A stretch of 64,000 nucleotides of DNA from NCBI RefSeq assembly GCF_003918875.1, contig NW_025766980.1:3596001-3660000 (forward strand), read 5' to 3'. Position 1 is the first letter of the stretch; every line of letters begins with the position of its first letter. The notes below the pieces were generated by a model. That model saw only the letters and a list, made by a program, of their open reading frames with translations. It was not told the DNA's origin and did not search any database. This document shows, piece by piece, positions 8,687 to 48,696 of the stretch. The position numbers and the translations under genes were made by a program. This DNA is from Haliotis rubra. Taxonomy: Eukaryota.

Positions 8687-8848
8687 GGGGCGGTGGGGTA
8701 GCCTAGTGGTTAAAGCGTTGGCTTGTCACGCCGAAGACCCGGGTTCGAATCCCCACAGGGGTACAATGTGTGCAGCCCATTTCTGGTGTCCCCCGCCGTG
8801 ATGTTGCTGGAATATTGCTAAAAGCGGCGTAAAACCAAATTCAGTCAG
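8687..8848 (+). mobile_element. SINE family A, full length, with 14-bp TSD
   Basis: Starts GGGGCGGTGGGGTAGCC; flanked by perfect direct repeat TCTTACTAGCTGCT (8673-8686 and 8849-8862). Confidence 0.95.
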
Positions 8849-16447: not shown

Positions 16448-16482
<35 letters not shown>

Positions 16483-17449
16483 CGAGTGCACTTAATTACG
16501 ATTTATTTAGAATTGATATTTAAAATATGACGCATCATGTCAATATGGCCATGGATGTGAGAATATTTTTCAATTACTTACTTGAATGTCCATTGTATAC
16601 TACTCAAAGACATAAACTGTTACAATATTTAGAAAGAATTGTTAAAATTAGAACACTGATTGGTATTAATTGTATCTTACATGGCAATGCAGGTGTCTCA
16701 TTTACTGCAAATCAGAATGTTTTCAAATATGTACATATCTATATCTCTCCAAACAAAACGTTTTCTCAGTTAACTTCTGTTGTACATATGCTATTATTGG
16801 GAGGGGTCTTTTCTATCAATAAACACAATCAAACCTCTCAGTGACAAACCTGTTTTTATATTCGATAGTAATTGATAGTAAAATTTTGAGAAGAGAAATC
16901 ATTTATCATTTAATCACAACAAAGTTCTATTTACAATCAAACTTCTCAGTAACGAGCCTGTTTCAGACTCACCCTGCTCTACTCACTAGACAGTGGACTG
17001 TTCCATTATACCCGTAGGTGTTAACCTAATTAACCTTCTAGTTCAGTGTCTGTCAATTGGGTGTCTGTCAAATGGGTGTCTGTCAATTGGGAGATAACCG
17101 ACATGTTATGATGTCTGTTGATTGCAAAATGTTATACACAAAAAATGAGCCTGTATTTACAAACCCAACATCTCTATATATACACACACAATGAGCCGTG
17201 AAGGCATCTGCAAGTGAACCAGTCGTTACACTTGAGTGCACACCCACCCGCTCTGACTGGGTTTGGTATCCCGGCTCCTTCGTTTCTTGGGAAGTAAACC
17301 GAAGTACACAATTTTGCACTTTTGATTTGCGATTGTACGCTTATAATTTTGTTTATACGTTTTTTCATTACCAGCAATGTATATTATATGTCATGAATAA
17401 GTGATAATTGTGTTTTAATTATGTTTGATTTTTTGGTTGCATGTGACCT
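15335..17449. mobile_element. Non-autonomous TTAA-specific DNA transposon (Kolobok-like), with nested insert
   Basis: TTAA|AGGTCACATGCAAC ... GTTGCATGTGACCT|TTAA; empty TTAA site in the right arm near 22773; second copy at 26252-27329. Confidence 0.88.
16059..17099. mobile_element. MITE with 8-bp TSD (Merlin/Mutator-like) nested in the Kolobok-like element; contains a LINE 3' fragment
   Basis: TSD GACATGTT at 16051-16058 and 17100-17107; imperfect TIR GGTGTCCTCCC/GGGAGATAACC; 15-bp subterminal repeats GGGTGTCTGTCAATT; absent from the 26.2-27.3 kb copy. Confidence 0.75.
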
Positions 17450-17515
17450 TTAAACTAATTCTGACAACTCACATTGAGATTTTGCTATTTCTGACAAAAT
17501 GCAAGGGATACCTCA

Positions 17516-20039: not shown

Positions 20040-20071
20040 TTGTGCATTTGTGAAGTTGGAAGGCCTGTTCT

Positions 20072-22710
20072 ATATTTTGGATGGATCAGGTGGGCCCCAT
20101 ATACTGACAGAGACTGGTGTTCTTGCATGTGGATCCTTGAATGGTTTCTTAGGAGGTAAACACTACAATCGATGTAAACGATTGCATCCAATACTCTCTG
20201 TTGCATTTTGGAAACTTCACTTCAAGAAATTCTTGTCTGAACACTCTGTTCCTGAAAACTTCATTACAAAATTGAAGAGACTTTATGGATCTGCATAGGA
20301 AAGGACCCTGGTCGAGGTTTTGGAATCAGAGGAGATTACTGCATTTCTCAGAGCCTAGGACCACTTCATGAATGAGACACGATCTGGAACTCATGGCAAA
20401 ACAGCTCAATACTGGATGATGTACATCGATCTGGTCAATCTGTACCTAGAGCTTGTAGAACCAGTGATCTTGCACTGTTCACCTACTGCTTTGGGAAATT
20501 GTGTCCACTGTACTTTGCAGTTAACCGTTACAGTTATGCAAGATGGATGACAAAATATCATCTCAATCTCATGAACATTGACAATACACACGCTGGTGCA
20601 AGACAAATCCTGGAACAGGGTGGACTTTCAGTCAAAAGAACAACCAAGCCTTTTGCAAAGAGTACCAGTGATATGGCCCTGAAACAGACTGAATGCAGAT
20701 GCTGCATCGAGACAGACAGGCATCTTATCCTTCACTCAGTCACTATCCGCCAGACGACGATGGATGATAACACGTGCAATGAGGAGTGCAGTGGTAAGAG
20801 AGAGTTCTACAGATTGTAGATCTAATAGACAAGGAAGATGTCACAAAGGAATGCAAACCAGCACGGATCAAATGGGACCATGAAGATGTTGTAAGTCTTG
20901 CTACTGCAATTGAAAGTTGCCTGAACCCTTTCACAATGGCTCATCCAAACACACATATGTAGTATATAACAACGGGAAAACCTCTAGCAGAACATGTTGC
21001 TGATGAACTTGTAAACTGCATTCATACAGGTGAAAGATGGTACAATGAATTTTCAGATGGCTGTTTTTCTGACCAGGACAGATTTGAAAAACCAATCCCA
21101 AGAAGAAAGATGCAGAATTTCACTGCTGGAGCTTTTAAGGCAAACAATCAGACCAAAGACAAGAAACTTAAAGAACTTCAGTGTTCTCGTGATTTGTTTG
21201 GTCGACTTTTATACCTTGCCTCTTCTAGTGAAATTGATCTCGCTGAAGTATTCAGGTTCCTCTACACCTCTTCCACTTTCACTTGGTCAAATGGATGGTT
21301 CAATGAACAAGACTGACAAGTCAAAACTGATGAGATGTTTGGAAGAAAAGGTAACAGGCATTCAGTTCCCAGATAACATTCACGTGTGTGTCATTGATGG
21401 AATGTTCCTACTCCAGTCTCTTACAAACCTTCCTTCAAGATATGAAGACATTGCCAAGTTCATCCTACAGATCCTCTGCAAATATGGAACCCAAGTAGAA
21501 TTTGTATGTGACACTTATGCAAGTCCATCAATAAAGGGCATTGAGCGAAGAAAACGTGGAGCTTCTGCAGAAGGCACGGTTGTCAGTGATCCAGGTCAGA
21601 ACAGGCCTTCCAACTTCACAAATGCATTGAACTCTGCGTGTTTCAAGTCATCCTTCTTGAGATTTTTGGCTGATGAATGGAGAAGTGACACATAGTCACA
21701 TTTTAGGCACCACAACACTCTACTTTTCTCTTGAAGATACATGTTATGTGTTTACCGCTAACCAGGGAATTGTGGTGAGGACTGTTGTTCCACATCTTCG
21801 ATGTACACATGAAGAGGCAGACACAAGAATCATTTTTCATATCTACAATATCTGCCAAGATTTGAAGAAAGCACACATATCAGTGCGAGCCTCAGACACT
21901 GATATCCTTGTACTTTTGATTCATCACATCCAAAGACTTGATGGAGCTCACATCTGGATGGACACAGGTCACAGCAGCAACAATTCAAGGAGATACATAA
22001 ACATTAATGCAATTTCCAAGGTCATTGGGAAAGGAGTGTCTGACTCCTTGCTTTCATTTCATGCATTTACTGGATGTGACTATACTTCAGCTTTCGTTCG
22101 AAAGGGGAAAGTGCACCCACTTCAACTTCTGGAATCCTCTGTTGCATTTCAGGCTGCCTTTACATGTCTAGGAAACACAGGAGGTACCTTCACATGTTGC
22201 TTCAGGATGTGAACAATTTGTATGTGCGTTGTATACAAAACCAAGCCTGTCCAGTGTCGATAATGTGCGCTATAGTTTGTTCAAACAAAGATACACTCCA
22301 GCACCAGGCCGTGGTCCTTTAGACAAAATCAAAGGAACAGATGCTGCTGTATTTCCTCCTTGTCAAGTATCGTTAGTATAAAAAATATTTTAAAAAAAAA
22401 TGTTTCAAGTATGTGGAAGAATGCTCATCTCTGTGTCGTCATATGAGCGAAATATTCTCAAGCACGACGATAAACCCAATTTCACCTCACCTCACCTCAT
22501 CTCTGTGATCCATTGAAGTTCAAACCAGAAGGAAATGGATGGAAGTTGGAGGATGGAACTTTTCAACTTGTATGGTACGAAGGACTACAGGTACCTACAT
22601 GTGTCACAAAACAAATGAGTAGCACATTTCCAGACCCTGAAGAATCAGATGAGGTTGAGGCTGGAGAAGATGACAGTGACTCTGCTACTGACGATGAGTA
22701 TGATCCATGA
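20072..22710 (+). pseudogene. Academ-like transposase/XPG-nuclease pseudogene, right arm (N-terminus missing)
   Basis: GKHYNRCKRLH, HEEADT, DTDILVLL and FHAFTGCDYTSAFVRKGK (FEN/XPG-type motifs); acidic C-terminal tail. Confidence 0.82.
22436..22497 (+). mobile_element. 5'-truncated SINE family B tail inserted in the transposase; mirrored at ~17729-17795
   Basis: TCGTCATATGAGCGAAATATTCTCAAGCACGACG...(CACCT)n flanked by direct repeat CATCTCTGTG; present in both arms. Confidence 0.85.
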
Positions 22711-23585
22711 TGAGGTATCCCTTGCATTTTGTCAGAAATAGCAAAGTCTCAATGTGAGTTGTCAGAATTAGCTTAATTTTTTAAAACTATTACATGTGTG
22801 TGCGCGCACGTGTGTGCGTGCATGCATGCATGATTTACTGGCCTGATGAGCTGTTTTGTAACATGAAGAAATGTTGGTGATTAATTACTCTTTAAATATA
22901 TGTCCAACTACATGTATATAGAATAAAAAGCAAGTTATATCTCTTTCTGAAAACCACATTTTACAGAGTTATCTCCCCTTGAGTGATTTTATAGAATTAC
23001 CCTTACACTCTTTATCTTAGATAAAACACTAACCCTGAGTGACATATGCATTTTGTTGATATATTTGAATTCCTTTACACATTTTTACATAATTAAAAGC
23101 CTTAAATACTGTATTATATTATACTTTAGTTTCATTACACTGAACTTCAGGTGGTAAAATGACAAAAAATTGTAAATCTACGAAGAAAAACAATATGTCA
23201 TTACTCTACATACCACACTGTTAAACATTTTATTTTGTGAAATTACACATTTATCTTTCTTCTTTACATTGCAACCAGTTTGGGTGAAATACTGAGTATT
23301 TGTAGTTGGGAAATGGCATTTAAAAGGATGCAGCAGTATACCTGAAGAAAATGCTGAGTCATCGCTTCAACGCCCCCTAGTGGGCTAAAGCCACTGCTTT
23401 GATATGTAAGACTGAAATTTTTGGATTCGTGAGTCAATTTTACATCAGAATACATGTCAAACATTTTGGCCTCTCTCGGTACAAAAATCACCCCCGGGCT
23501 CTTGGACTAAACAGGAACTGTCAAATTCTTTAGACACGAACTAAAAAACACATTTTTACACATGTCCGAATTACATTGTAGAAGT

Positions 23586-23680
23586 GGGGCGGTGGGGTAG
23601 CCTAGTGGTTAAAGCGTTGGCTTGTCACGCCGAAGGCCCGGGTTCGATTCCCTACATGGATACAGTGTGTAAAGCCCATA
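23586..23680 (+). mobile_element. SINE family A, 5' fragment
   Basis: GGGGCGGTGGGGTAGCCTAGTGGTTAAAGCG...GGTTCGATTCCC. Confidence 0.85.
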
Positions 23681-24029
23681 TTGACCACAGTATTTTCTAT
23701 ATTTCATAGTAGTAGAATATTACATGTCAAAATGAGACCAGCTCTAATATCGACAAGTGATTGCAGCATTTACTGATATCCTCGGTCGTAATCAGCTAAA
23801 CAGTTAACCATCATTCAAAGAAATACTGTTATAAGATATCTTAATCCATGACGGTTTCAGACGTGATAACATTGTTGTAACGTGTTGTACATTGAGAAAT
23901 CCAAAGACAGTGGAAGTGTCAGAATATCCTTCCATTGTTGTATCACTATTCACGATTACTGTACATGCTCCAACGCATCTTGCGGGTTTGTAATGTACCC
24001 TAGCGTACGATCCTAATAAGGCATGTTAT

Positions 24030-25911: not shown

Positions 25912-26080
25912 GAGTGAGTAATTGAGTTTAGTTTTACGTCGCTTTTAGCAATATTTCAGCAATATAACGGCGGGGGGACACCAGAAAATGGGCTTCACAC
26001 ATTGTGCCCATGTGGGGAATCGAACCCCGGTCTTCGGCGTGAGAAGCGAGCGCCTTAACCACTAGGCTATCCCACCGCCC
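25912..26080 (-). mobile_element. SINE family A, full length
   Basis: Reverse complement of the family A consensus; flanking direct repeat AAGTTAGGT. Confidence 0.9.
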
Positions 26081-27955: not shown

Positions 27956-28444
27956 TTATTTCCCCACTATCTCAGGGGACGATCCGAGATTCAACTCACA
28001 CAGAAAAAATTCTCTGTTTTGACAGTCATTGTCGTCCCACCGGTAGGCCTCTTTCTTGTACAACATTAGACAGAGCTGGGTGACAGCCTTATTTGGGTCC
28101 CCAGGAGCCCACCAGGTATTGGCGATCCGGGTATTTTCAAATCCCCACTGCCACTCGCTGGGTACCAGGTATGTCAAACCACCGATCCAGACACCGTCAG
28201 TCGTTATAGTAGAGTTTTCTCGTATGAGATAACCTTCAAGGAATGTCTGTTCCGAAGCCGTCTTCACGCGAGCCAGGTGGGAGCCTATAGCCTGACAGTA
28301 CACAGCCGCCTCTGCCCACGATGCTTTGACACGGATGAGACTGTAGCAGGAGTCGTCGTGGCGCAGGAAGCCGCTCGGACAGTCACTACAAACCACGTTC
28401 ATAACTGCCAAGAGGACAGTGATACTTATTGATGAGTAAAACAT
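27956..28444 (-). CDS. Perlucin-like C-type lectin, copy 3 (162 aa, DPN/WDD)
   Basis: Signal peptide, CTLD cysteines, WIGG, WDD; ends PEIVGK. Confidence 0.92.
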   Translation of the reverse strand: MFYSSISITVLLAVMNVVCSDCPSGFLRHDDSCYSLIRVKASWAEAAVYCQAIGSHLARVKTASEQTFLEGYLIRENSTITTDGVWIGGLTYLVPSEWQWGFENTRIANTWWAPGDPNKAVTQLCLMLYKKEAYRWDDNDCQNREFFLCELNLGSSPEIVGK

Positions 28445-30876: not shown

Positions 30877-31865
30877 CTATGTCGTGTTGACAGGAGGTAA
30901 TACTGTGTCATACGGTACAATCAATAATTCTTCTCTTACAAACCCTCTGCCTGGCCCATCCCTCAAGAAATACAAGGTAGGTTCGCCGGCTTTGATGTCA
31001 ACTTTATCTATGTTGTAAGTTTTGACTGACCATATAGGATCAGTGGCTCGTTTCCGGCTATCCCCCTCGTGTTCCCCGGCTGGTATAGATACCTCACTAG
31101 GGACCCTATCTGGTATCTGTTTCTCCTTCCCACGCAATGGAGCAGCCGACTCTGCTATTATTGATTTTAATTTTATAGCGCGTCTGCCGGCTTCTTACCA
31201 GTGAGTCGTGTGATTTCATGATTTATGGCAGACACCACCTTAGGGAGCCGTTCAACCCATTCAGTCGATCGTTTTTCTGGGTTGGTCATTTCTCTCGCAT
31301 ACTGATACCCGAATAAACGCTCAGCCAAAGTCCTATTAAATCTCTCAACTATGGCTTGGCTGCGATGGGCTCCAACCGTGCCACGTCTCACTCGTACTTT
31401 GTGCTTAGTCAGCAACTGTGATACAACACCCATGAACTCCCGACCAGGGTCAACTTGGAGCTCTGTTGGCCACGTTAGTGGACTGCGTTTGTATATGCGT
31501 TCAATGGCTTGAGCTACCTGGGCAGAATCTTTCGTGGTCAATGGTTCAGCTTCCTTATACCGGCTGGCTACATCCACGATAGTCAGGGCATACTTGTAGG
31601 TTTTACGTCTCACCCTGTCGTGAGGTAGGAACAGCAGGTCTGCTTGGTGAACGTTATTAGGTATGTTAATACCAAACTTCCTTCTAGGCACATAGCGTGG
31701 TGGTGGTAAATATATCTGCCAAAGTGCTTGTTTTTCAAGCCATGTTTTGACCTCCTCCGGGGATACTCGAGCCATTTTAGCTAGCTTATCTACAGCGCTA
31801 GCTCCTTTCCAATACCCACGCGGACTATAGTAAATAGCCTCAAACTTTTTCTGGTTCCGTGACAT
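30877..31865 (-). CDS. Retroviral-type (rve/DDE) integrase; one frameshift near 31178
   Basis: HQADL, VDPGREF and VERFNRTL catalytic motifs; continues as ADAIKLKSIIAES...GKEKQIPD after a 2-nt GC indel. Confidence 0.92.
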
Positions 31866-31883
31866 GTCACTATTTATTTATAC

Positions 31884-34800
31884 CTATGTTCTTGGTTCAA
31901 TTTTCTCATGCCCGTACGCGTACGTGTTTATCCCATCAATGGCTATCCAACGTTTGGTATCCATAGGGGATAATGATGTTTTATTTATAGTCAGCCCGTA
32001 TATCCTATGCCCATCACTTCTAAGTGTGTTCATTTTATGTTTAAAGGTACGGGTCTTGAACAGGGCTTCCTTGAATCTGGCGTGTTTGATGTGTTGTTTC
32101 ACCACGTATTTTTTTACACCCTTAGCTTTCCGGATCTCACCATTGTCGGCCTTCAGTATGGAGTACATCTTAGGCCTCAACCCTATGTACTCGGCTATGG
32201 GCGTGCCAGCACACTCGTCCTTCATCTTACCTAGGACCTTTTTATTCACCGTGCTGTGTATGGTATGGTCCTTGGGATAGTCGCTGGTGTCGTACAAATC
32301 GAGGTGTTTTTTCATGTCCTCGTACACGTCCTCGGTTCGAATCTCCATCAGCAGGGAATCCGTGTCAGTGTATAGCACTTCACACCTGTCATCGTACTGT
32401 TTCTTCAGCTCGTTGTAGTAAAAGTCGTACATCAAGTGTTTGGATAAATCGAGGATGCTCATCCCAACGTAAACAGGCCGGTTTAATATTATGTGACTTT
32501 TCTTCATGTGTATGGCAGCCAGGTCGTTATCGAATATCTTACTACGGTTGAATGCAGGGTTAGCGATCAGCTTCCTGAGTTTTTCCTCCTCATTCGACCG
32601 AACCAGCTTCACGTCCACGCGTTTCCTCAGGTTCTCCATCGTCTTACCGAATACCGAGTTGTTCATGAGCTTATAGAAGTTTTTCTCAAAGTCACTGGTG
32701 GCAAGCTTTCGGAGGTCCGTGTTCATTCTGATGTAAGGCTCCATCCATGGGCTCTGGTTGAACTTCAGCACTCTGTGTATTTTGGTCAGTTTCATACCCA
32801 ACGACAGGTACAGCTGCAGGTTGCGATAGTGAACTATGTATTTGGTCTTATTCATTAAGTTAGGCACGAGTTTTTCAACGCCCGTCACCCGCCTATCTAA
32901 CAAGTTATGTTGGTATTCAGACATCCAGTCTGGGTTAACCCTCATACGTTCGGGAGCTAGCGGATAGCTGTTGTGTGATTCGTGTAATGCTTTGGGATAC
33001 TCCAAGTCAACCTCGAGGATATAACCTTTGTTCGAATCCGGCGCGATGCTCATAATATCGAAATCGGATGATACCCATTTGAATCCCCCCTGTTGGTAGA
33101 TACTGACTCATGGCCCATCCGTACAGGTTATTTGCGTCGAGATAGAGAATGTGATTGGTTGGTTTGCTAGGGTCGTAGCCATTCACGTATTGATTATTTG
33201 CTTTAGCGTATCGTTTGGTTGCCATGGAGATCCCACCTCGCAAACCTTTCTCAATGAACAGGTGCATGTCATAATCAGTAAGCAATTCCAACTTAACTCC
33301 GGTCTTTTTAAGCAAGGCATCCCACGACAGGCCTGGGCTGGTGTAATACCATGCTGGATCTAGTTTATACTGCTTGATACATGTCCTCCTAAATGTCTCA
33401 AACACGTCGGCTAATAGTAGTACATCCATCTTCAAGTACAGATCGTGATAGTCACCCAGGTTTTTTACAACCAAGTTTATTCCATACATTAATAGCGTAC
33501 GAGTAATCGTCTTCGGATATTTCCGAGTCTGTCAGATTGCTGTAAAATTCTCTGATGGGAGGTAGTCTGGTCTCGGCGAACTTAGTCCAACTATCCATGT
33601 ACTCATAGGGATACACACCCTTCCTCATAAGCAGAGATCTAGTCTCGGCGTCTGTGTATCGATCGGTGATAGGGAAGGTATCGTTGGCTTTGATCAGGCT
33701 GGCTAATGACGACAATAGAAATTGACACGAGTCAATGAACCTAAGTCCGTCTAAGCTGAAAGAGAGATATTTCTCCATGTTGTTGGGGATGCACGTTATA
33801 TTACCATCGATTTTCGCGATGGCCTGCATGATTAAGTGAGAGTCGTACCCTCTCAAGTTGTGAAAGACAACGGGAATGTTTATTGTTTTAGGGTTGATTC
33901 TAAGCTTGAGGTTACACTCGTTATGAGCGGCGCCTCTATACTTACCGGTTATGTGACAGTGATCTCTCACCGAATCACCGTTCAGTGGTGAGTCACACAC
34001 GTGACAGTTAATGCTACGGGAGTGAGCTAACCTGTCGGCTTGGGTCATACGCATGGGAGCGATTCTATGCAACTTTTCCCTAATAATTTCTTCTTCCTCC
34101 TTCAAACACTTTAGAAACCTTTCAACCGCGTCAGGACCCCTGTACACTACGGGAGATTTCGTTTCACCGTCACAACGGACGACTATGTATCCAAATCCAC
34201 ATGCTTCATGCTCTTGTGTTTTGTATGTGAAGCTCTCACCTGTGGGTAGAGCATTGGGGGTCCCCCCAATATCAACTGGTTTGACCAAGGCTTCAAAGTC
34301 GGCGTATATAATATAAGGAACAGACATTTGGTGCTTGTGGTTGTAGAATTTTAGGATATTGTCACCTTCCTCGGGCATGTCGATGCGTATAGCCGTCTGT
34401 CCCACACCTTGACAATACTCCTGGTGGGATTCTAATAAATCAGCTCGGCTGAAACCGTGCAGACATCGCATACAAAAGTGTTTTTTCCCATTGTGTTTCG
34501 ACTGATCGTGCAACAACCGACTGAAATGTTTTATCCACGTGTAGTGATACTTTTCACCTCGTTGGATCATGAATATATTGATAACACGTTTCCCCACCAA
34601 CGAGCTGAGCCTGTGTATTATTGTTGTGTCGTCTTCGTGTCCAAAGACATTTATAGCTAGATTATTCTGTTTTTCTACTTTAGTGATCTGAGATATGGTG
34701 GTTGGTTCATCTATACCATCCCAGTTGAGTCCATCGTCTTGGGGATAACTAGAAGGCCTGTTCGAATTAGTGTCAGCTGGAAACAAGGCTGATCTGATAG

Positions 34801-35290
34801 CTAATCTCAAGCAATCGTTTCCTCTATTCTTAACGTTTACTATGGCCTGTTTTTTCTTATAGTAGGGAGGCAAGTCTAGGTATGACCCGCCTTTGAACGG
34901 CACGTAGTTAGCTATGTCTAGATAGACAATATCGATTTTATCTACAGCCCACCCGGATCCCAAGTGTGTGTAGCGTTCTAGGTATTCCTGTATCTGCTGA
35001 AAACTAGTATCGATCGATGTGTTTATAGTCTCTATCTGGGTCACGACCTCTTGTACACCTCGGAAGTAAGGCTGAACGTACTCGGTAACATCCCCTACGT
35101 TCTTTTCGAGTGTCATTTTAATTGTGATTTGAAATTTGATACTTCCAAGACTGGCTAGTTCCTGTTTTATTTTATCATCTATCAGGGGCTTAATATCTGA
35201 GACATCTATATTCCTATCAACGCGCATGCGCCAGCCTCTTAAATACTTACCTACAGCGCGCTCAGTGCGTACGAACTGTATAGTATTCAT
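31884..35290 (-). CDS. Protein-primed family B DNA polymerase; two homopolymer frameshifts (~33465, ~33088)
   Basis: Exonuclease motifs YADFE and FHNLRGYD; inserted endonuclease-VII-like RDHCHITGKYRGAAHNECNL; KGVYPYEY; polymerase motifs DANNLYGWAM, KLMNNSVFGK, YTDTDS. Confidence 0.95.
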
Positions 35291-35348
35291 AATTGCGTAC
35301 ACACCTAAGGAATTAATGTCTAATTGGGCCGCCGTAAATGTAAAAAAA

Positions 35349-37618: not shown

Positions 37619-38266
37619 AAAACACACTATAGGCTACTGGTTGGTCTGTCTTAAGCACGAGCTTAGCGTGTTTAGTTTCAGCTAGCTGTTTCTTCACCCG
37701 TTCCCCGTTCTAATTTGCTCATCACATCGTTCTCTCTCAAACACTCTTCGAACGAATCCCTGTCCTTGCAGTGAAATAAGGCAACCCATCGCGTCTGCTC
37801 CCTGAGGTCTTTCAACACCGAGTTGAACTTCTGCGTTAGCACCCAGACGCTGTGCTTTGCGTGTCGGCCTGAAAATGCCAGGTACGATAGCATATCTCTC
37901 TTTTTTGTTATCTCGCGATTAGCGCTGCAGTCGTCCAGTATGAACAACGTCGACTCCCCTTTAAATTTCATATGGTAAGCTTTCAACCAGTCCTGTAGAC
38001 GTGGCCCCGGATCGACTCTGTGTACGTCAGGGTCCGTCATAACCCAAGGTCTTTCCGTGTACGTTTTATTCATGCTCAGAGTAGGACACATGATAACGAT
38101 GTGGTCGAACACATCCCTGTAGTACCCCCTCCAACATATCCAACACGAAAACGGTCTTCCCACAGCCAGTCTGCCCGCACACTATGGCGCAGTGTGGGTC
38201 GCGGGGCAAATCAGTAAATGGCTTGCCGCCAGGCAAATCAGTAAATGGCTTGCACGAATCTCCCAT
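37617..38266 (-). CDS. A32/FtsK-HerA-type genome-packaging ATPase (two frameshifts)
   Basis: Walker A GQTGCGKT, Walker B LFILDD, GRHAKHSVWVLTQ arginine-finger/sensor motif. Confidence 0.9.
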
Positions 38267-39496
38267 TGTCTATATTAAGTTGCGCATCCATAATAACGTA
38301 CAGATATAATTTCAACTTGCCAGCGGGTTGAGCCTTCTTGGTAATCTGGATAGTAATTCCTTCGCTACCATTGTCTATTCTACGGCCGCTACCGTGTAGT
38401 TTATCGTCATCCGTGGATCGCATGTCCAACCACAGCGCGTACTTGTTAGTTAAGTATTCACCGATTTGCACGGAGGATAGGTCCAGGTCTTTGGCTATAT
38501 ATGGATGTTTGCTCGGCAGCTTTTTTATCTCATCCCACTGCTGGTACGCACGCATACCATGACTAAACAGCTGGTTGGGCACGCCCTCGATGGTCACTTC
38601 CACCTTTTCGATCTCTGGGTTGAAAAACTTCTCGCTGTCCCTCCGGAACGGCTCGTAATCCTCCACAGGGACTACCAGGATGCCTTTCATCGATCGCGCC
38701 GGCACGTTCAGGTTGATATTCCACACAGTGTCGCTCTTATCCCGCACGATGGATCTATGCCTCAGTATACGATCGTACAGGATGGCTACATTACCCGAGT
38801 ACTGGTTTCGAACCTGCCTTGCCAGCTCGGGTTAGTGACCATGTCGAACTCCAGAGAGATGTTGTCTATGGTATAACTGGCCTCATCACCGTTCGGCGTA
38901 CGCACTACTTTGCTGTAGTCGTTAAACGTGAGCTCGTATTCAAGCCTATCACCCAGCGCGGCTTGGTAAAACGGCGCGTGTTCCGTGAGCAACTCGAAGT
39001 CGAGCGGCACGCAGAACCGGTTCCCGTACGCTTGAGCGATGGCCTTTTCACCGTCCGATAGCTTGTCTAACTGGTCTGCCGTGAAGGCATACCCAATGCG
39101 CGACCTGGTCGATTTACTGATACCTTGGTACACGTCATTGACGCGTTCTCCCTCGCTTTTCCAGAGGTCCTTGTAGCAGTGAAAGACGTCGCTGTCGTCG
39201 ATGCTCAGCACCTCGTTACCGGTGATCTTGATGGTGGTTTTCTTGATAATAGCTCGACCTACGTTCCGCACTAGCTCGCGTTTGTCGTTGTCGGAGGTCA
39301 ACGTGATGTTGAACGCCAGTCGAACAGTGCCTGGTACAATGAGGTCATTCGCGCCAAGGTTTGGAAATCTAACCAGCAGCGTTTGATTCTGGTCTATCTT
39401 GCTGGGATTGTTGGTGATGGTCACCGACTGACGCACGGCTTTGACACCTAGTGGCTCTCTCGATCTTCTGAAAGGATCTAGTTTTCTACCGTACAT
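38238..39496 (-). CDS. Major capsid protein (probable double jelly-roll, ~420 aa; frameshift near 38830)
   Basis: Size, beta-rich pattern (LLVRFP, LAFNITL, FCVPLDF, LEYELTFN, NISLEFD, LYLYVIMDA) and position directly upstream of the ATPase. Confidence 0.78.
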
Positions 39497-39535
39497 TGTT
39501 ATATAAATGAAATATATAAGTTTTAATACTAAATA

Positions 39536-40653
39536 ATGGCCGAGTATATCCCTATGGAGGATATGTGGGATAATAGTGCCCTGGATGATGTTTCATCCTC
39601 ATTAAGTGGTGAACTCGTACAGCCAACTGTCAACGATTATTACAACGCAGTTGAAAATAGAAGACATCAAACCGTTGGGGAGGGACTATTCCAAGTTTAC
39701 AGTCGATAATAAGGGCACGTTGCGATTGAAGGCTTACCCGGAGATCGATCTCATGAATAAGCGCACGAGAGAACCGCTTGCCTTATCAACACTCACCAGT
39801 CGTCATGGTAGTAACTTTATCCGTGATGAACTAGGCTTCGTAGATTACGGCGGCGCGCGACCTAAACTTCCTCCTAAGACCGTCCAAGATCTGCAAGCAG
39901 CCAGAGTCAATACTAGGAACGCTAAAGAAACGTCAGACAGTATCGAAAAAATATTGGCTACGTATCATGATAAACCCTTGCCGGGTCTCGAATTTCCTCT
40001 GAGAGAACTGCGAGGCTTAGACAAGCCTTGAAACATGTACGTGGAGAACTCGTTAACAACATGGGTAAACTGAACGAAGTCGATGAGCGCATCGCTCGCG
40101 AGAAAATAAAACTAACCGAAACTGAAGACGATGATATGAAACGTCGCATCGAGGAGAGAATAAAAAAACTTGGAAGACGAGAGACGGACTCGGTTGGAAT
40201 CCGCTTCCTCGAACCGGGAAGCCCTCCGATCACAGATCAGTAGAGTACGGGAAACCATCGATCGAGTCCTAAATGAAGACACCACGCTAGCTGACAGGAT
40301 CCGAATCCTGTTCCGTGAACAAGGCATCACCATCGCCAGCATTCTGACTGCATTGGGCTTCATCATATCTACCCTGGTGGTGTCACTTAGTGGGGGTACC
40401 CCCACACCCCCAAGTGGTGGCGGTGGTGGCACAGGTGGTGTTAAAGAGTGGATTAAAAAACTAGGGGGAAACTCTAGCTAAACTGGCTGGTAAGGCCGCC
40501 GAAGCCCTGCCTGGCATCCTGGGTAGCATCGTCTCGTGGTTGCTGAGTGTTTTAGCTAAAACTGCTACGTGGCTCAGTCAAAACCTGTGGGCAGCCATCG
40601 TCGCAGTAGCTGGTTTGGTGTACGTAGCGGCTAAGGAATTTTTAACCAAATGA
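39536..40653 (+). CDS. Viral coiled-coil/membrane protein (several frameshifts)
   Basis: Coiled coil followed by hydrophobic ITIASILTALGFIISTLVV, a Gly linker, amphipathic LPGILGSIVSWLLSVLA and a C-terminal hydrophobic helix. Confidence 0.65.
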
Positions 40654-41797: not shown

Positions 41798-42466
41798 ATG
41801 AGTTTATATAACATGTACATAACACTCCCAGGAATAACGAGCGGCGAGGCCGTTCAGCTGACGCACGCGATCGATAACACGTCGGGTCAACTCGAAATAG
41901 CACTGTGCGATATAACCTACCTACCACGATGGACTAACATCAACGCTAGCAACAATAAACTGTTCGTAGGTGGCGCTAGCAACAAGATAATTGATGGTTA
42001 CTACAGCGTGTGCTCTCTAAGCGACGAGGTATTCAAACCATTGGGAGCCGAACTCAAGATGAACGACTCAAACGGCACAGTGGTGTTAATCAACAACGGA
42101 AGAAACTCCTTGCGGCTAGGCCGGCCATTGGCTAGAACACTCGGTATGCAGCCTGACGAGGTAAAACCAACGACTACAGTCACAGGCGCGAAGTTACCCG
42201 ACTTAGTACCGTACCGAGAGCTGTGCATTCATCTCAACCAGGTTAGCACAACGGACAATATTCAAGGAGGCCACCCTTCCACTATACTTAGAGCAGTGCC
42301 GGTTAAAACGGAGAAATACAACGACGGCAGAACCGAGTCGTTTTCAACGTGGCAATATAAGAGGTTAACCCAGGGCAACATCCCTGAGCTGATAATATCG
42401 GTGTTAGATATAAATCATAATCTCGTGAATATAGGATACCTCAGCGTAACGCTGCACATAAAATGA
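41798..42466 (+). CDS. Minor capsid protein (penton, single jelly-roll; 222 aa)
   Basis: EIALCDITY, IIDGYYS, ELCIH, STILRAVPV, YKRL, IISVLD and terminal VTLHIK pattern typical of Polinton pentons. Confidence 0.75.
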   Translation: MSLYNMYITLPGITSGEAVQLTHAIDNTSGQLEIALCDITYLPRWTNINASNNKLFVGGASNKIIDGYYSVCSLSDEVFKPLGAELKMNDSNGTVVLINNGRNSLRLGRPLARTLGMQPDEVKPTTTVTGAKLPDLVPYRELCIHLNQVSTTDNIQGGHPSTILRAVPVKTEKYNDGRTESFSTWQYKRLTQGNIPELIISVLDINHNLVNIGYLSVTLHIK

Positions 42467-43383
42467 CCAGCGCACAAGGTCCCGGAATGAAGTTGAAAAA
42501 ATGCACCAATGTGGGGATCTCCGATCTCGGGGACACACGCGGATTCGACGACCCCGGAGTAGATGGTAAAGTGTACGCCTTGCAACTTAAAAACAGCATT
42601 TATAAACGCGTTGAAGTTTCCGGTGGTACTAGCAACCTAAGCGATATAGTAGATACCTCAAGAGCGGCAGTCAACACTAAGTACACCCTTGTCACCACCG
42701 GGGATGATAACTGGATGATATACCCATACGGGGGCAAACTGTTCGACTTAACCGATGTTGAGAGCACTACCGTCGCCCGAAACAAACCATATACGCTCGT
42801 TTTCACCGATGATGACAAGTGGGTGTTATTACCGGGTAAAGTCGACTGGTTTCTCAATATTAGGCTCGGCTCCCCCTACGTGTTTACGGATAATAAAGAC
42901 AACCACCTAAACAAAGTCGTGAACAACGGAACCCTGCTCGTGGCTTACATCCCGACTCAGAGACGTAGCGTAGTCATCAGCCCACTCGCCAGTATGGCAG
43001 CCCACATGCTATCGAGTAAAGCGGGGATGCAAAACGTGGTATTGCAGTTGGTGTCTGAATTCGAAGGTGTGGTCAGGATCCTGGAGAGTCTACCGGCGAA
43101 CTCAACACTGGTCATCCAAGTCTACCTAGGGGAACCATCGCGGAATGATGTAGAGATCGTGAAGGGGGTCAAACTCCGGTGGGGGAAACAACAACAGTAT
43201 CACGTTTGCAACGTTTACGTGCGGGTGGGTGTCGACTCCAAAACCAGTCTGCAGGGTGTCACCGTGGTCGTGGAAGACACTATATCACTAACCAAGATAT
43301 TCCTACCCGACAACATACACTTCATGGGGGTGAAGTGCACCCCTGAACTATTATCAGAAAACCAGTTGGAAATTATCTCGTAA
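42463..43383 (+). CDS. Putative fibre/spike protein 1 (306 aa)
   Basis: Overlaps the penton stop codon; three (I/L)xD(L/I)xD(T/V) shaft-like repeats followed by a beta-rich head. Confidence 0.6.
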   Translation: MTSAQGPGMKLKKCTNVGISDLGDTRGFDDPGVDGKVYALQLKNSIYKRVEVSGGTSNLSDIVDTSRAAVNTKYTLVTTGDDNWMIYPYGGKLFDLTDVESTTVARNKPYTLVFTDDDKWVLLPGKVDWFLNIRLGSPYVFTDNKDNHLNKVVNNGTLLVAYIPTQRRSVVISPLASMAAHMLSSKAGMQNVVLQLVSEFEGVVRILESLPANSTLVIQVYLGEPSRNDVEIVKGVKLRWGKQQQYHVCNVYVRVGVDSKTSLQGVTVVVEDTISLTKIFLPDNIHFMGVKCTPELLSENQLEIIS

Positions 43384-43393
43384 TAATATAGCA

Positions 43394-44120
43394 ATGTCTT
43401 GGATTCGCCCCAACACTACGATTAACGACTTAGGGGACACGGAGGGATTCGATCAGCCTGGTGAGGAAGACACCTTATACATCCTGCACTTGAAAGACAA
43501 CGTGTATAGGCGGGTGTCGTTATCAGATTTTAAAGAGCCTGAATGGTTAGTCAACTTAACCCTCACCTCACCTTATATCTCCCTGAAACAAAAGAATACT
43601 ATCTCCGAGATTAGGAACAACGGTATGATTATAGGATCGTTCGTTCCGGAATCTAGTGTACAAGTCATACCAATACCAGACCACTCGGGCAACATGTTAG
43701 CTTCAGACAGTGGGAGGGTAAAGATAGAGATCAAATTACTCGATTACCAAGAGGTTTTTAGAAATGTTGCGGAAAACTTCACATTCATCATAGACGTCTA
43801 TCTCGGAGATATAAGTTTGACTAGTAGTTATATTAGCATTATAGATGATATGGTGATAGGTTGGGAAGCCAGGTGTAATAACCAACGTTGTTGTATTATT
43901 AAGGTATCAGGAAACGACCCTGTACCAACCCTTGATGGGGTTCGTCTCTTTAATGGACGTAGAGCTAAGACCCCGCTTTTTTTACACGCACGTTAATCTA
44001 AGTATTATCGGCTTTAAGTACATTAATCGAAGGTTAAATGAAACCCAATTAAAATATATTATGGGATTGAGCTATATCCCTGAATTAGTACCAGAACACT
44101 AGTTGGAAATTATATCGTAA
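43394..44120 (+). CDS. Putative fibre/spike protein 2 (paralogue; frameshifted 3' part)
   Basis: INDLGDTEGFDQPG, WLVNLTLTSPYI and IRNNG shared with neighbours; 3' end TTGGAAATTATATCGTAA mirrors the LEIIS* end of fibre 1. Confidence 0.6.
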
Positions 44121-44133
44121 TAGTATTATAGAA

Positions 44134-44851
44134 ATGTCTTGGCTTCACCCCAACACTACGCTTAACGATCTAGGGGACACGGAGGGATTTGATAAGCCTG
44201 GTCATAAAAACACCTCATACGTCCTATTATTTAACAACGGTGTGTACATACGGCAGGACCTGGCAGTCTTTAAAGAACCTAAATGGGTGATCAACGTGAC
44301 CACCACCGCACCTTATATCTCACTAGACAAAGATGGTTATGTCTCTGAAATTAGGAACAACGGTACCTTGCTCACGTCTTTCATTCCAACTGAAAGGATG
44401 ATAGTTTCTAACTCTGAATATTGGCCTAGGGACACCCTGTTAATTTCAGCCAGGAAGTCTCAGTTAATAGCCACCCACCACCATCATTCCATAATAGGGG
44501 TTAGGGGTATGGAAACAAACTCCACACTCATCGTAGAAGTCGGTTACAAGGATAAGTTTGATTTGGATGACCTTGACCCATCCCCAAACTTGGAACTTTT
44601 ACCTGGTGTAACAATACGTTGGGGTAACGACCCCTTAACATCAGGTTTTTTTATCTTGCATATTCGTGATACGATTGGGGGACTCCCAACAGGGATTACT
44701 ACCCCCCATAATAAACTGCTATGATGTTGAGATAGACCAAAAGTTACCTATTGACCCTTCCCGTATCTACACATATGAGAATCTAAGTTTTATAAGCCTC
44801 AGGTACGTTGGCCAACTATTAAGTGATGCCCAATTAAAATATCTTTTGTAA
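44134..44851 (+). CDS. Putative fibre/spike protein 3 (paralogue; frameshift near 44705)
   Basis: LNDLGDTEGFDKPG, WVINVTTTAPYI, IRNNGTLL, VTIRWG. Confidence 0.6.
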
Positions 44852-44864
44852 TATATATTATAGG

Positions 44865-45471
44865 ATGGGACTGTATCCAGGCATAGATGAAGTAGTAAAG
44901 ACCCTGGAAACCGTAGACGGGTTTCGCTTGAGACAATTATGTGATGTAAGACGCCAACTAGAACAAGATCGTGACAAGCGGGAAAGCACTATATAAAAAT
45001 ACCATAGAGCTTTCAATGCCGTGGATGGGGCCGATACTACCCTTATGGCAACCAGCATGGGACTAGGGGTGGCAGGTGTTGGGTTGTTGACAACCATCGT
45101 GGCTGCACCTATAGTGTTGGGACTCGAAATAACGGCTGGGGTGTCAGGGTTGGCTGGATTGGTATTTAAGTTTGTTTCTCGCAGACTGCATCGTAAGGCA
45201 TTGAAGCATGATGAGATCAGAGTTCTGGCTGAAGCAAAGCTTAACACAATAGATGATCATATTTCCACGGCACTCACTGACAACAAAATCTCGGAGGAGG
45301 AGTTTCGTTTAATCCTCTCTGAACTCGCAAAATATGATAAAATGAAACAAGAAATCGGTCCAAGTCTCGTAAAAGTCTGCTACTATCAGCGAGGATGAGA
45401 AAAAAAAAGTACATAGAACAGGGGGGTACAAAAAGCCCAGCAAGCCTTTATTACCAACACCAAAGACATAG
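44865..45471 (+). CDS. Viral membrane-active/coiled-coil protein (frameshifted; 3' end approximate)
   Basis: FRLRQLCDV..., Gly-rich hydrophobic hairpin GLGVAGVGLLTTIVAAPIVLGL..AGVSGLAG, then KHDEIRVLAEAKLNTI...ISEEEF. Confidence 0.7.
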
Positions 45472-45849: not shown

Positions 45850-47060
45850 CCTGCGACAATCGTATAAAGTCTTGGATATCTATAAAACAATTGAATTCAG
45901 AATGCCAGGCGGGTTTCAGAGAAGGATGCTCAGCCATCGACCATATATTGAGACTGCATAGTGTCATACTTGGGTAAAAGGGTATGTTCTAATGCAAATT
46001 TGATTTCAAGAACGCATTTTATACTGTCCATAGTTCCAAATTGTTATCAGGTGTAAATAGGAATCGATTTTACGCTTCTACAAAACGTGCACTAATGCTA
46101 CAGCTTCTGTAAAAACAAATAAGTGGGAAATGACGGACATATTATAACCACCTTCACTGGTGTAAGACAAGGTTCTGTTTCGTCGCCTGTCCTCTTGATG
46201 TTATACACTGAAGAACTTGTAAAGAAAATACTGTCGAATGATACAAGAGATATACTTAAAACACGATGAAACTATTCTGTGTCACTTTTTACCTACGTTG
46301 TGGCTATCTTTGCAGACTCTGTGGTTCTGTTACAACGTAAAATAGATGTTTTATATGAGTATTGTTTAAAGTGGGGGTTAACAGTAAATAGTGATTAAAC
46401 GAAATAACAGTTTCTGAGAACGGAGGTAGATTATCCAACAGTTCTCGATAAAGAACATCAAAAATGGTTTTTAAACCGTACAGAAAGTGAAGTAGTATTA
46501 TATCATAAATATATAGGTATAGTTTCTTGTATAAATATGTTCTCAAGAGCCTTGAGGCATTTTCTATGTAAGGAAAAATAATTTCTCATGTCACAAAAGA
46601 ATTTTTAACCAAATGTACAGAAATGCCAATCAAATCGTCATTTAGATTATCCGTCGGAATAATGCTACCGATCTTGGCGTATGGTTCAGACGTTTTGGGC
46701 ATACATAACAATAAAACAATAGAAAAAGTACATTTCTGTAAATGTCTATTACATGCAGTATACAAAGCTGCGAATAAAGTCATACTAGCCGAATGAGGCA
46801 GTTCTCCATGATTTATGAACGCCGATACTAGTGTATTATCGTATTGGATAAGATTAATAAGACAACCATGAACAAGATATTCCAGAAACTGTTATGATGC
46901 ACTGAAAAGACGAAATGGCACGGGCGACATAAACCTGGTATCGTTTGTACGTAATTTACTAAGTTTGGGGCGTGTATGACATGTACAAGATGTTTGTACA
47001 TCTACATATAGACTATGATGTACAGATATCTATCAACATGAACGGGTCAACGAAATGCGA
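45850..47060 (+). pseudogene. Decayed LINE reverse transcriptase and C-terminal region
   Basis: Translates to QAGFREGCSAIDHI, DFKNAF, GVRQGSVSSP, LPILAYGS; many stops. Confidence 0.85.
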
Positions 47061-48204: not shown

Positions 48205-48696
48205 TTATTTCCCAACTATTCCAGGGGTGGACTTCAGCTCCAGTTCACATAAGAAAAACTCCTTGAAGTTACATTCTTTGTCGTCCCACCGATAGCTCTC
48301 TCCCTTGTACAACATCAGACAGAGCTGGATATTGTGATAATCATCAGGCTGTCCAGGAGACCACCAGGTACTTTCGATTCGGGTGTTCTGAAATCCCCAC
48401 TGCCACTCGTTCTGTATCAGGTACGTCAATCCACCTATCCACACTCCATCAGTAGTTATAGTAGAGTCTTCTCGTTTGAGATAACCTTCAAGGAATGTCT
48501 GTTCCGAAGCCGTCTTCACGTAAGCCAGATGGGAGCCTATAGCCTGACAGTACACGGCTGCCTCCGCCCATGATGCTTGCACACGGATGAGACTGTAGCA
48601 GGAGTCGTCGTGGCGCAGGTAGCCGTTTGGACAGTCACTGGAAACCACGTTCACAACTGCCAGCAGGACAGTGATACTTATTGATGAGTAAAACAT
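48205..48696 (-). CDS. Perlucin-like C-type lectin, copy 4 (163 aa, QPD/WDD)
   Basis: Signal peptide, CTLD, QPD; ends PGIVGK. Confidence 0.93.
   Translation of the reverse strand: MFYSSISITVLLAVVNVVSSDCPNGYLRHDDSCYSLIRVQASWAEAAVYCQAIGSHLAYVKTASEQTFLEGYLKREDSTITTDGVWIGGLTYLIQNEWQWGFQNTRIESTWWSPGQPDDYHNIQLCLMLYKGESYRWDDKECNFKEFFLCELELKSTPGIVGK

What the first reader, a model, noticed from the sequence alone, without database searches (positions are those of the whole stretch)
42463..44851. Tandem cassette of three paralogous fibre-like genes with conserved anchors and divergent heads, directly after the penton
Seen: three consecutive genes share an N-terminal module (I/L)(S/N)DLGDT(R/E)GFDxPG and a W-x-(L/V/I)N-x4-(S/A)PY...NNG block, then diverge strongly. 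Gene 1 carries two extra LxD(I/L)xD(T/V) repeats. A ~105-nt direct repeat spans the gene1/gene2 junction (~43360-43462) and the gene2/gene3 junction (~44098-44202). Established: LxDLxDV-type repeats occur in viral fibre shafts, and fibres dock on pentons. Inference: this is a receptor-binding repertoire that can expand, contract or swap heads by recombination across the junction repeats (an accordion-like host-range cassette), which I do not recall being described for animal Polintons.
Basis: partly seen in the sequence, partly recalled or inferred. Interest (0 to 1): 0.8.

Follow-up and report, generated by a model that had tools for sequence, protein, structure and literature searches.

The report
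Three lectin-fold genes after Polinton penton
A decayed virus-like Polinton element in what is probably a mollusc genome carries, right after its capsid-corner (penton) gene, three tandem copies of an unnamed gene family with a conserved front end and a variable lectin-like body; they are plausible cell-attachment proteins, but only one copy is intact and the proposed copy-shuffling mechanism is not shown.

Summary
Three adjacent paralogues follow a penton-like gene. They share the N-terminal motif and the W..PY..NNG block. Gene 1 has two extra repeats. A ~117-nt tract that is 85% identical sits at both inter-unit junctions.

Refinements:
- Only gene 1 is an intact ORF. Units 2 and 3 are each read in two frames, and the element's polymerase, capsid and ATPase genes are also in pieces.
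- The "heads" are one fold. In the confident part of the model it is a ~180-aa jelly roll, closest to ConA/LamG-like lectin domains of phage virion proteins. No adenovirus-fibre match came back.
- The C-terminal tail is conserved too.

The family is real and unannotated: 181 clusters, with no Pfam, PHROG or PDB sequence hit. Members have 1-3 N-terminal hairpin repeats. Four read-through gene calls elsewhere show the same penton-then-family order.

The likeliest reading is capsid-anchored, lectin-like attachment proteins that duplicated in the viral lineage. This is inferred, not shown.

The junction tract is younger at silent sites than the gene bodies. That fits gene conversion or recombination, but also a DNA-level signal. 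The accordion idea stays untested, because I did not fetch sister proviruses and referred that step.

The parts
41798..42466 (+). Penton-like minor capsid protein gene (222 aa, intact ORF). Its stop overlaps the start codon of gene 1 by 4 nt.
   Evidence: ORF. It has 11 homologues, 38-91% identical. The AlphaFold model is poor (pLDDT 57), but the BFVD matches are coherent: adomavirus LO5, MELD virus 'putative penton capsid protein', mavirus minor capsid protein and giant-virus minor capsid proteins, with E down to 6e-9. There is no Pfam or PDB sequence hit.
42463..43383 (+). Gene 1 (306 aa), the only intact member of the cassette. Residues 1-55 form the conserved N-terminal unit (42463-42627). 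Residues 56-128 are the two extra repeats (42628-42846). Residues 129-306 are the jelly-roll domain with the conserved tail (42847-43380).
   Evidence: (pLDDT above 93 over residues ~130-300). P0001 is 82% identical.
43394..44120 (+). Unit 2, a family member with one N-terminal repeat plus the jelly roll. It is broken by at least one frameshift and one premature stop.
   Evidence: tblastn with gene 1 finds homology in two frames, with outer bounds 43412-44117. The pieces together cover family-profile positions 18-279. P0044 is 73% identical to its N-terminus.
44134..44851 (+). Unit 3, a family member with one N-terminal repeat plus the jelly roll. It is broken by at least one frameshift, and its tail ends early compared with gene 1 and unit 2. 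Faint tail homology runs on to about 44866-44878.
   Evidence: The closest outside relative is P0125, an uncharacterized protein of Haliotis rubra (58% identity).
43354..43470 (+). Junction tract 1: the tail of gene 1, the spacer and the first ~26 codons of unit 2.
   Evidence: It is 85% identical to junction tract 2, while the flanks drop to 62% and about 40%. Families D1 and D3 cover it.
44091..44210 (+). Junction tract 2: the tail of unit 2, the spacer and the first ~26 codons of unit 3.
   Evidence: Third codon positions are identical at 27 of 30 sites in codons 1-30, against 31 of 61 in codons 31-91.
44865..45398 (+). Next gene of the module: a small predicted membrane/coiled-coil protein, not a family member, interrupted by one in-frame stop. 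It is preceded by a spacer resembling those of the cassette.
   Evidence: No Pfam hit.
38238..39496 (-). Double jelly-roll major capsid protein gene, broken by at least one frameshift.
   Evidence: Capsid_N hit at E 1.6e-3, below the Pfam cut-off. Two ORF pieces in different frames.
37678..38266 (-). A32/FtsK-like packaging ATPase gene, broken by at least one frameshift.
   Evidence: Pox_A32 at E 5.7e-4 for one piece. Weak P-loop family hits (E 0.004-0.085) for the other piece.
31884..35302 (-). [quoted passage not shown]
   Evidence: DNA_pol_B_2 at E 6.7e-5 on the middle piece. Three overlapping ORF pieces.
31173..31865 (-). Retrovirus-like integrase (rve) gene.
   Evidence: Pfam rve at E 4.8e-10, above the cut-off.

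Best explanation
The cassette is three tandem paralogues of an unannotated Polinton protein family that is encoded directly after the penton gene. Each member has a conserved N-terminal unit (a short helical turn plus a beta hairpin, present 1-3 times) and a ~180-residue jelly-roll domain of the ConA/LamG lectin type.

The most likely function is a capsid-surface attachment protein. By inference, the conserved N-terminal unit fixes it to the capsid, probably at or near the penton. Also by inference, the variable jelly roll binds a host surface ligand, probably a glycan.

The three copies arose by tandem duplication in the viral lineage, before this copy integrated. In this integrated copy only gene 1 is still intact, so the cassette is a fossil of such a repertoire and not a working one.
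For: Shown:
- Paralogy and architecture.
- The family has 181 representatives at E <= 1e-3, with typical lengths of 230-310 aa.
- The jelly-roll part of the model is confident (pLDDT 83 overall, above 93 for residues ~130-300).
- BFVD matches, at E 7.5e-5 to 1e-3 and TM 0.35-0.54, are to ConA-like lectin/glucanase and LamG-like jelly-roll domains of phage virion and tail-fibre-like proteins.
- The PDB best matches are lectin-like jelly-roll subdomains, though none reaches E <= 1e-3.
- The upstream ORF is penton-like.
- The penton-then-family order recurs in four divergent read-through gene calls: P0079, P0094, P0100 and P0148.
- Across the family the first N-terminal unit is the most conserved part (42%, against 21% for the body).
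- Each paralogue type has a closer relative elsewhere than its own neighbours: P0001 for gene 1, P0044 for unit 2, P0125 for unit 3.

Context from papers: ConA-like Laminin_G_3 domains are reported in fibre proteins of protist Polinton-like viruses (PMC12220804).
Against: - No direct evidence places these proteins on a particle or shows that they bind anything.
- No Pfam lectin family is detected in any of 48 members, so the lectin assignment rests on fold alone, at modest TM scores.
- The N-terminal repeats are modelled with only moderate confidence (block means of pLDDT about 53-85).
- Oligomeric state and penton contact were not testable here.
- The penton model itself has low confidence.
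- Two of the three units are broken, although assembly indel errors cannot be excluded.
Confidence: 0.5

Rival explanations
1. The junction tracts are recombination substrates through which units are gained, lost or exchanged, giving a changeable host-range repertoire.
For: - The junction tract (~117 nt, 85% identity) is much less diverged than the bodies on either side.
- The excess is at silent sites. Third positions are identical at 27/30 in codons 1-30 against 31/61 in codons 31-91, Fisher p = 2e-4.
- The tail of gene 1 and the tail of unit 2 share 15/19 third positions, although their N-modules share only 12-13/38.
- The number of N-terminal repeat units varies from 1 to 3 among family members.
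Against: - 85% identity and a longest exact match of 19 nt are poor substrates for homologous exchange in the present copy.
- The paralogues are old. They are 31-36% identical to gene 1, and gene 1 is closer to homologues in other elements than to units 2 and 3.
- None of the 150 listed family representatives was a read-through from the end of one unit into the start of the next, whereas four penton-to-family read-throughs were seen.
- No copy-number or order comparison among sister copies was made.
Confidence: 0.2
2. The junction tract is conserved because the DNA or RNA itself carries a signal. Candidates are the end of the upstream transcript or the promoter, start context or leader of the downstream gene. 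On this reading recombination is not involved.
For: - A similar spacer (stop codon, AT-rich stretch, TATAG-like motif, ATG) also precedes the next gene at 44865, which is not a paralogue.
- A TATA(G/A)..ATG motif sits exactly at the start codons of the major capsid gene and of units 2 and 3.
Against: - The conserved tract runs about 77 nt into the coding sequence and about 40 nt into the upstream tail, which is long for such a signal.
- The penton/gene 1 junction lacks it.
- The short motif is not enriched above chance once position is ignored.
Confidence: 0.25
3. The proteins are not attachment proteins. They could be another kind of capsid component, such as cement or decoration on hexons, or non-virion lectin-like proteins acting on the host.
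For: - Jelly-roll folds are common in minor capsid and decoration proteins.
- Nothing here shows surface exposure.
- There is no signal for trimeric fibre architecture.
Against: - The linkage to the penton gene is conserved.
- A conserved N-terminus with a variable distal domain is the usual signature of receptor-binding proteins.
- The fold matches are to virion or tail-fibre-like lectin domains, not to capsid cement proteins.
Confidence: 0.2
4. The triplication happened in the host genome after integration, so it is dead DNA that duplicated and says nothing about the virus.
For: - The element is decayed.
- It lies in a region of host tandem duplications, a C-type lectin gene array.
Against: - Divergence between the units is far deeper than the decay of the element.
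- Each unit type has a closer relative elsewhere: P0001 at 82%, P0044 at 73%, P0125 at 58%.
- Units 2 and 3 keep full-length matches to the family profile.
Confidence: 0.05

Closest known systems
Fibre and attachment proteins of protist Polinton-like viruses that carry Laminin_G_3 (ConA-like lectin) domains (PMC12220804)
   Same: Both come from the same broad virus group. Both have a ConA/LamG-type jelly roll as the presumed ligand-binding part, and both are thought to attach to the penton.
   Different: The protist proteins are long modular proteins whose domains Pfam detects (Laminin_G_3, Peptidase_S74 chaperone, collagen, phage tail repeats). Here the proteins are short (230-350 aa), no Pfam domain is detectable in 48 members, the N-terminal hairpin repeat is distinct, and the hosts are animals, apparently molluscs.
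Adenovirus fibre, including adenoviruses with two or more fibre genes (my own knowledge; PMC12220804 cites two fibres per penton in avian adenoviruses)
   Same: Both show a conserved N-terminal part with a variable distal part, several paralogous genes side by side, and a functional link to the penton.
   Different: No adenovirus shaft or knob family or structure came back from any search. The repeats are hairpin units of about 35-40 aa, not a shaft repeat. The distal fold is a lectin-type jelly roll. Trimer formation is untested.
Phage receptor-binding proteins with ConA-like or LamG-like distal domains (BFVD matches, for example a virion structural protein of Synechococcus phage S-PM2 and 'Concanavalin A-like lectin/glucanases superfamily' proteins of uncultured phages)
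   Same: They are the best fold matches. They share the general logic of a conserved virion anchor with a variable head.
   Different: Sequence identity is only 8-13% with no profile-level link, and the virion architecture is different (tailed phages).
PW protein of vertebrate Mavericks and the 'Adintoc' proteins of adintoviruses (PMC8097293, PMC8502044)
   Same: All are conserved proteins of unknown function in the capsid module of animal Polintons. PW is listed between the minor and major capsid genes in the same module.
   Different: Relatedness was not tested, because no such protein came back as a named hit and I fetched no animal-virus comparator.
Poxvirus-type genomic accordions (my own knowledge)
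   Same: Both involve tandem copies of a gene that faces the host.
   Different: Accordions consist of near-identical recent copies whose number varies between closely related genomes. Here the copies are 31-55% identical in protein, and no copy-number variation was examined.

Membership tests
Polinton/Maverick element | [quoted passage not shown] | tested here: met
   DNA_pol_B_2 at E 6.7e-5, below the Pfam cut-off, on one of three ORF pieces.
Polinton/Maverick element | Retrovirus-like (rve) integrase | tested here: met
   rve at E 4.8e-10, 40 bits against a cut-off of 32.6.
Polinton/Maverick element | Double jelly-roll major capsid protein, penton and packaging ATPase | tested here: met
   Capsid_N at E 1.6e-3 and Pox_A32 at E 5.7e-4, both below the cut-off. 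Penton identified by fold.
Polinton/Maverick element | Terminal inverted repeats and target-site duplication | tested here: not met
   No inverted repeat brackets the element. The ends are probably lost or decayed.
Polinton/Maverick element | Adenain-like maturation protease | tested here: not met
   No protease family was found in the ORFs scanned. Not every small ORF was scanned.
Adenovirus-type fibre | Sequence or profile match to fibre shaft or knob families | tested here: not met
   No Pfam hit for the window proteins or for 48 family members. No PDB sequence hit with a family profile.
Adenovirus-type fibre | Knob-type distal fold | tested here: not met
   No fibre knob appears among the top 50 Foldseek matches in PDB or BFVD. 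The matches are lectin-type jelly rolls.
Adenovirus-type fibre | Homotrimer with an N-terminal tail that docks on the penton | not testable with these tools
   Only monomer prediction was available.
ConA-like lectin/glucanase (LamG) superfamily | Jelly-roll beta-sandwich fold of that type | tested here: inconclusive
   BFVD gave 14 matches at E <= 1e-3, mostly annotated ConA-like or LamG-like, with TM 0.35-0.54. PDB gave none at E <= 1e-3. The search used the whole model, including the flexible N-terminus.
ConA-like lectin/glucanase (LamG) superfamily | Profile-level sequence membership (for example Laminin_G_3) | tested here: not met
   0 of 48 members match any Pfam family at E <= 0.01.
ConA-like lectin/glucanase (LamG) superfamily | Ligand-binding site | not testable with these tools
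   No ligand or site prediction was available.
Tandem receptor-binding-protein repertoire (multi-fibre viruses, multi-RBP phages) | Two or more adjacent paralogues with a shared anchor and divergent distal part | tested here: met
Tandem receptor-binding-protein repertoire (multi-fibre viruses, multi-RBP phages) | All copies are functional and incorporated in the particle | tested here: not met
   Two of the three units are broken in this copy. Incorporation is not testable.
Genomic accordion | Near-identical tandem copies | tested here: not met
   Units 2 and 3 are 60% identical in DNA overall. Gene 1 is 31-36% identical in protein to the others.
Genomic accordion | Copy number varies among closely related genomes | not tested
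   This needs the DNA of sister copies. That step was referred.

The most novel reading that the evidence does not exclude
The junction tract (the tail of one unit, the spacer and the start of the next) is a recombination or gene-conversion module. Through it, Polintons of molluscs re-copy or exchange lectin-like distal domains downstream of the penton gene. That would make it a modular host-range cassette in an animal Polinton.
Probability: 0.15. Interest if true: 0.7.

Novelty: new variant of a known kind. Interest (0 to 1): 0.45.

Why it matters
It remains open whether animal Polintons still behave as viruses, that is, whether they form particles that recognise cells. The papers I could read describe capsid, penton, ATPase and protease genes, and several conserved proteins of unknown function in animal elements. 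They report fibre-like or lectin-type attachment proteins only for relatives in protists and fungi (PMC8502044, PMC8097293, PMC12220804, PMC4028283).

This family is penton-linked and unannotated. It has a conserved front end and a variable lectin-type body, and here it is present in three versions side by side. That makes it a concrete candidate for the missing attachment function.

It also gives a handle for descriptive surveys: which animals carry intact copies, how many versions each element holds, and whether the versions are mosaics. This particular copy is a fossil, so the value lies in the family and its layout, not in this locus.

Tried and rejected
- **Sequence libraries.** Pfam, PHROGs and PDB sequence searches with single proteins, with a 48-member alignment and with the N-terminal and C-terminal halves apart all came back blank.
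- **Word-based protein search.** It found only 3 relatives for gene 1 and none for unit 2. That justified the one exhaustive profile search.
- **P0144.** This 1079-aa hit with five matched stretches is an unrelated repetitive surface protein and was set aside.
- **Element ends.** A search for terminal inverted repeats found nothing.
- **Tandem Repeats Finder.** It reports nothing in the cassette, because the copies are too diverged.
- **Shared contigs.** I tried to infer shared contigs from contig lengths in cluster metadata. Only P0001 and P0157 share a length (2338 bp), which suggests penton plus a gene 1 orthologue on one contig. No other multi-unit contig was seen.
- **Possible fourth unit.** A faint likeness at the start of the next ORF (44865) was not supported by tblastn or by the profile search, and was dropped.
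- **First tree run.** timed out and one search was corrupted by an invalid distance value. Their results are void and are replaced.
- **Post-integration duplication.** Rejected on the depth of divergence and on the outside relatives.

- (a) In my private reasoning I recalled short motif strings of phage structural repeats from memory.
- (b) In my reasoning I remarked where one premature stop lies in unit 2 and how the paralogue differs there.
- (c) Note 1 gives the lengths of the first ORF pieces of units 2 and 3, from which a break place can be inferred. Neither (b) nor (c) is repeated here.
Full report
**Setting**

The window holds no N. Between about 31.1 kb and 45.4 kb it carries a Polinton/Maverick-type element:
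- an rve integrase at 31173-31865 on the minus strand (E 4.8e-10);
- a protein-primed B-family polymerase at 31884-35302;
- an A32/FtsK-like ATPase at 37678-38266;
- a double jelly-roll capsid gene at 38238-39496.

The polymerase is in three ORF pieces, and the capsid gene and the ATPase are in two each. That means at least two, one and one frameshifts respectively. No terminal inverted repeats and no protease were found. The copy is therefore decayed, unless the assembly has indel errors.

The element lies inside a host tandem array of C-type lectin genes. The closest named relatives of its proteins come from molluscs. One is an uncharacterized protein of Haliotis rubra. Another is a protein in a metagenome bin from a lucinid clam symbiont, probably host DNA.

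**The observation**

ORF 41798-42466 (222 aa) is followed, with a 4-nt overlap, by gene 1 (42463-43383, 306 aa). Units starting at 43394 and 44134 come next.
- The three share invariant D-L-G-D-T, G-F-D and P-G columns, then W, N, P-Y and N-N-G columns.
- Unit 2 versus unit 3 gives E = 2e-36, with 55% identity over the first 91 residues.
- The two extra repeats of gene 1 are significant (z = 10.6).
- The junction repeat is real. About 43354-43470 versus about 44091-44210 is 85% identical, with flanks at 62-75% and about 40%.

- Units 2 and 3 are not intact. Homology to gene 1 and to the family profile runs through each unit from profile position 18 to about 279, but in two reading frames. Unit 2 has at least one frameshift and one premature stop. 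Unit 3 has at least one frameshift and a tail that ends early. Only gene 1 is an intact ORF.
- The last ~30 residues are conserved among the three, not only the N-terminus.
- The "junction repeat" is the best-preserved segment of a whole-unit tandem duplication with a period of about 737-740 nt. Units 2 and 3 are 60% identical in DNA overall. Identity is 85% in the first 100 nt and falls to 47-59% in the middle.

**The family**

Word-based searches found almost nothing. Pfam, PHROGs and PDB sequence searches were blank. I therefore ran the exhaustive profile search once. It found 181 representative clusters at E <= 1e-3 and 102 at E <= 1e-10. Full-length members are mostly 230-310 aa.

Domain mapping shows one architecture: 1 to 3 copies of an N-terminal unit of about 40 aa, followed by a C-terminal domain of about 180 aa. 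Gene 1 and P0001 have three units. Units 2 and 3 have one.

None of 48 members matches any Pfam family, and the few members that carry any name are called 'hypothetical' or 'uncharacterized'. Across the family the first unit is the most conserved part (42% mean pairwise identity). The start of the C-terminal domain stands at 30%, and the rest at 21%.

**Fold**

With a 48-sequence alignment, AlphaFold2 gives pLDDT 83 overall and above 93 for residues ~130-300. That part is an all-beta sandwich. Each N-terminal unit is a short helical turn plus a hairpin, modelled at lower confidence.

Foldseek against BFVD gives 14 matches at E <= 1e-3. Most matches that carry a domain annotation are labelled ConA-like lectin/glucanase or LamG-like jelly-roll, and several others are phage virion or tail-fibre-like proteins (TM 0.35-0.54).

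Against PDB nothing reaches E <= 1e-3. The best weak matches are the receptor-binding domains of clostridial neurotoxins, whose lectin-like jelly-roll half (from my own knowledge) is the likely matching part. They share 7-12% identity, so this is a likeness of fold only.

No adenovirus fibre shaft or knob, and no PRD1-type spike, came back by sequence or by fold. These were the proteins I had in mind, and I fetched no comparator.

**The penton**

ORF 41798-42466 has 11 homologues. Its model is poor (pLDDT 57), so caution is needed. Even so, 28 BFVD matches reach E <= 1e-3, and the named ones are nearly all pentons or minor capsid proteins: adomavirus LO5, MELD virus 'putative penton capsid protein', mavirus minor capsid protein and giant-virus minor capsid proteins.

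Four divergent representative proteins from other assemblies (P0079, P0094, P0100, P0148) are read-through gene calls. In each, the end of a penton homologue runs into the N-terminal unit of the family. Two of them lie on contigs of 3.4 and 5.4 Mb. The penton-then-family order is thus conserved in other endogenous copies.

**Age of the paralogues**

Each unit has a closer relative elsewhere than its neighbours in the cassette:
- P0001 is 82% identical to gene 1;
- P0044 is 73% identical to unit 2, against 61% to unit 3;
- P0125 is 58% identical to unit 3, against 49% to unit 2.

In a neighbour-joining analysis of 150 shared profile columns, units 2 and 3 pair in 251 of 300 bootstraps, and gene 1 pairs with P0001 in all 300. 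The three form an exclusive group in only 5 of 300. Gene 1 is closer to several homologues from other elements than to units 2 and 3. The duplications therefore predate this integration and belong to the viral lineage.

**The junction tract**

Between units 2 and 3, third codon positions are identical at 27 of 30 sites in codons 1-30 but at 31 of 61 in codons 31-91 (p = 2e-4). The tails of gene 1 and unit 2 share 15 of 19 third positions, although the N-terminal units of gene 1 and units 2 and 3 share only 12-13 of 38.

The tract is thus younger at silent sites than the bodies around it. Protein-level selection alone does not explain that. Two readings remain:
- gene conversion or recombination between junctions;
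- a signal in the DNA or RNA.

For the second reading, a similar spacer precedes the next, unrelated gene at 44865, and a TATA(G/A)..ATG motif sits at the start codons of the capsid gene and of units 2 and 3.

Against ongoing exchange in this copy, identity is only 85% and the longest exact match is 19 nt. I could not separate the two readings without sister copies.

**Best explanation**

The evidence comes in three grades.

- Shown: a penton-linked, unannotated family with a conserved N-terminal hairpin unit and a variable jelly-roll domain, present here in three old tandem paralogues, of which one is intact.
- Inferred from the pattern and from what is established for receptor-binding proteins of adenoviruses, PRD1-like viruses and phages: the N-terminal unit anchors the protein on the capsid at or near the penton, and the jelly roll binds a host surface ligand, probably a glycan.
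- Not shown: particle incorporation, oligomeric state, binding, and any gain, loss or exchange of units.

**Comparison with what is known**

ConA-like Laminin_G_3 domains in fibre proteins are described for protist Polinton-like viruses (PMC12220804). For animal elements, the papers I read list capsid, penton, ATPase and protease genes plus conserved proteins of unknown function. These include PW, listed between the minor and major capsid genes in vertebrate Mavericks, and the Adintoc groups. Fibre-like genes are reported only in non-animal relatives (PMC8097293, PMC8502044, PMC4028283).

This family works most like a short receptor-binding protein. It is not a demonstrable member of the adenovirus fibre family, because the tested features were not met. 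Its membership in the ConA-like superfamily rests on fold only.

The step is referred.

Broken genes were searched piece by piece.

- They were used nowhere.
- I also remarked on the place and nature of one stop in unit 2.
- Note 1 gives ORF-piece lengths from which a break place can be inferred.
- The tree run was numerically faulty and is superseded.

**Verdict**

The novelty is a new variant of a known kind: a penton-linked attachment-protein repertoire, here with a lectin-type jelly roll and a new N-terminal repeat in an animal Polinton. Interest is moderate (0.45).

Noticed in passing
27956-28444(-), 48205-48696(-), and further copies near 51174, 54044 and 56825: There is a host tandem array of single-exon C-type lectin genes (Pfam Lectin_C, E 1e-10 to 3e-13). 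The two copies that flank the element are 80% identical in protein. Host-like flank homology reaches about 30344, so the element sits inside this array.
   Followed up: partly
46123-46269(+): A reverse-transcriptase fragment (RVT_1, E 5.7e-4) lies just right of the element. A retroelement may have removed or displaced the right end of the Polinton.
   Followed up: partly
14649-23457: This is a very large near-perfect palindrome. The arms are up to 466 nt long at 100% complementarity and nest around a centre near 20116. It may be a foldback structure or an assembly artefact.
   Followed up: no
1982-3955: A regularly spaced motif (TATAGAAATA, mostly 126 nt apart) indicates a satellite-like tandem array.
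   Followed up: no
1-87, 8688-8782, 23587-23682, 25986-26080: Short dispersed repeats of about 90 nt occur in both orientations at 86-89% identity, probably a small interspersed element of the host.
   Followed up: no
39494-39503(-), 43387-43396(+), 44127-44136(+), 44855-44867(+): A TATA(G/A)..ATG-type motif sits directly at the start codons of the major capsid gene, unit 2 and unit 3. A similar spacer precedes the next gene. It may be a start-context or promoter element of the element.
   Followed up: partly
39536-40481(+) and 44865-45398(+): Small ORFs with coiled-coil, glycine-rich and membrane-spanning stretches and no Pfam hit flank the penton-cassette block. They may be internal or membrane-active virion proteins.
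   Followed up: no
33452-35302(-): The N-terminal piece of the polymerase gene gives a sub-threshold Endonuclease_7 match (E 1.2e-4, residues 420-466).
   Followed up: no
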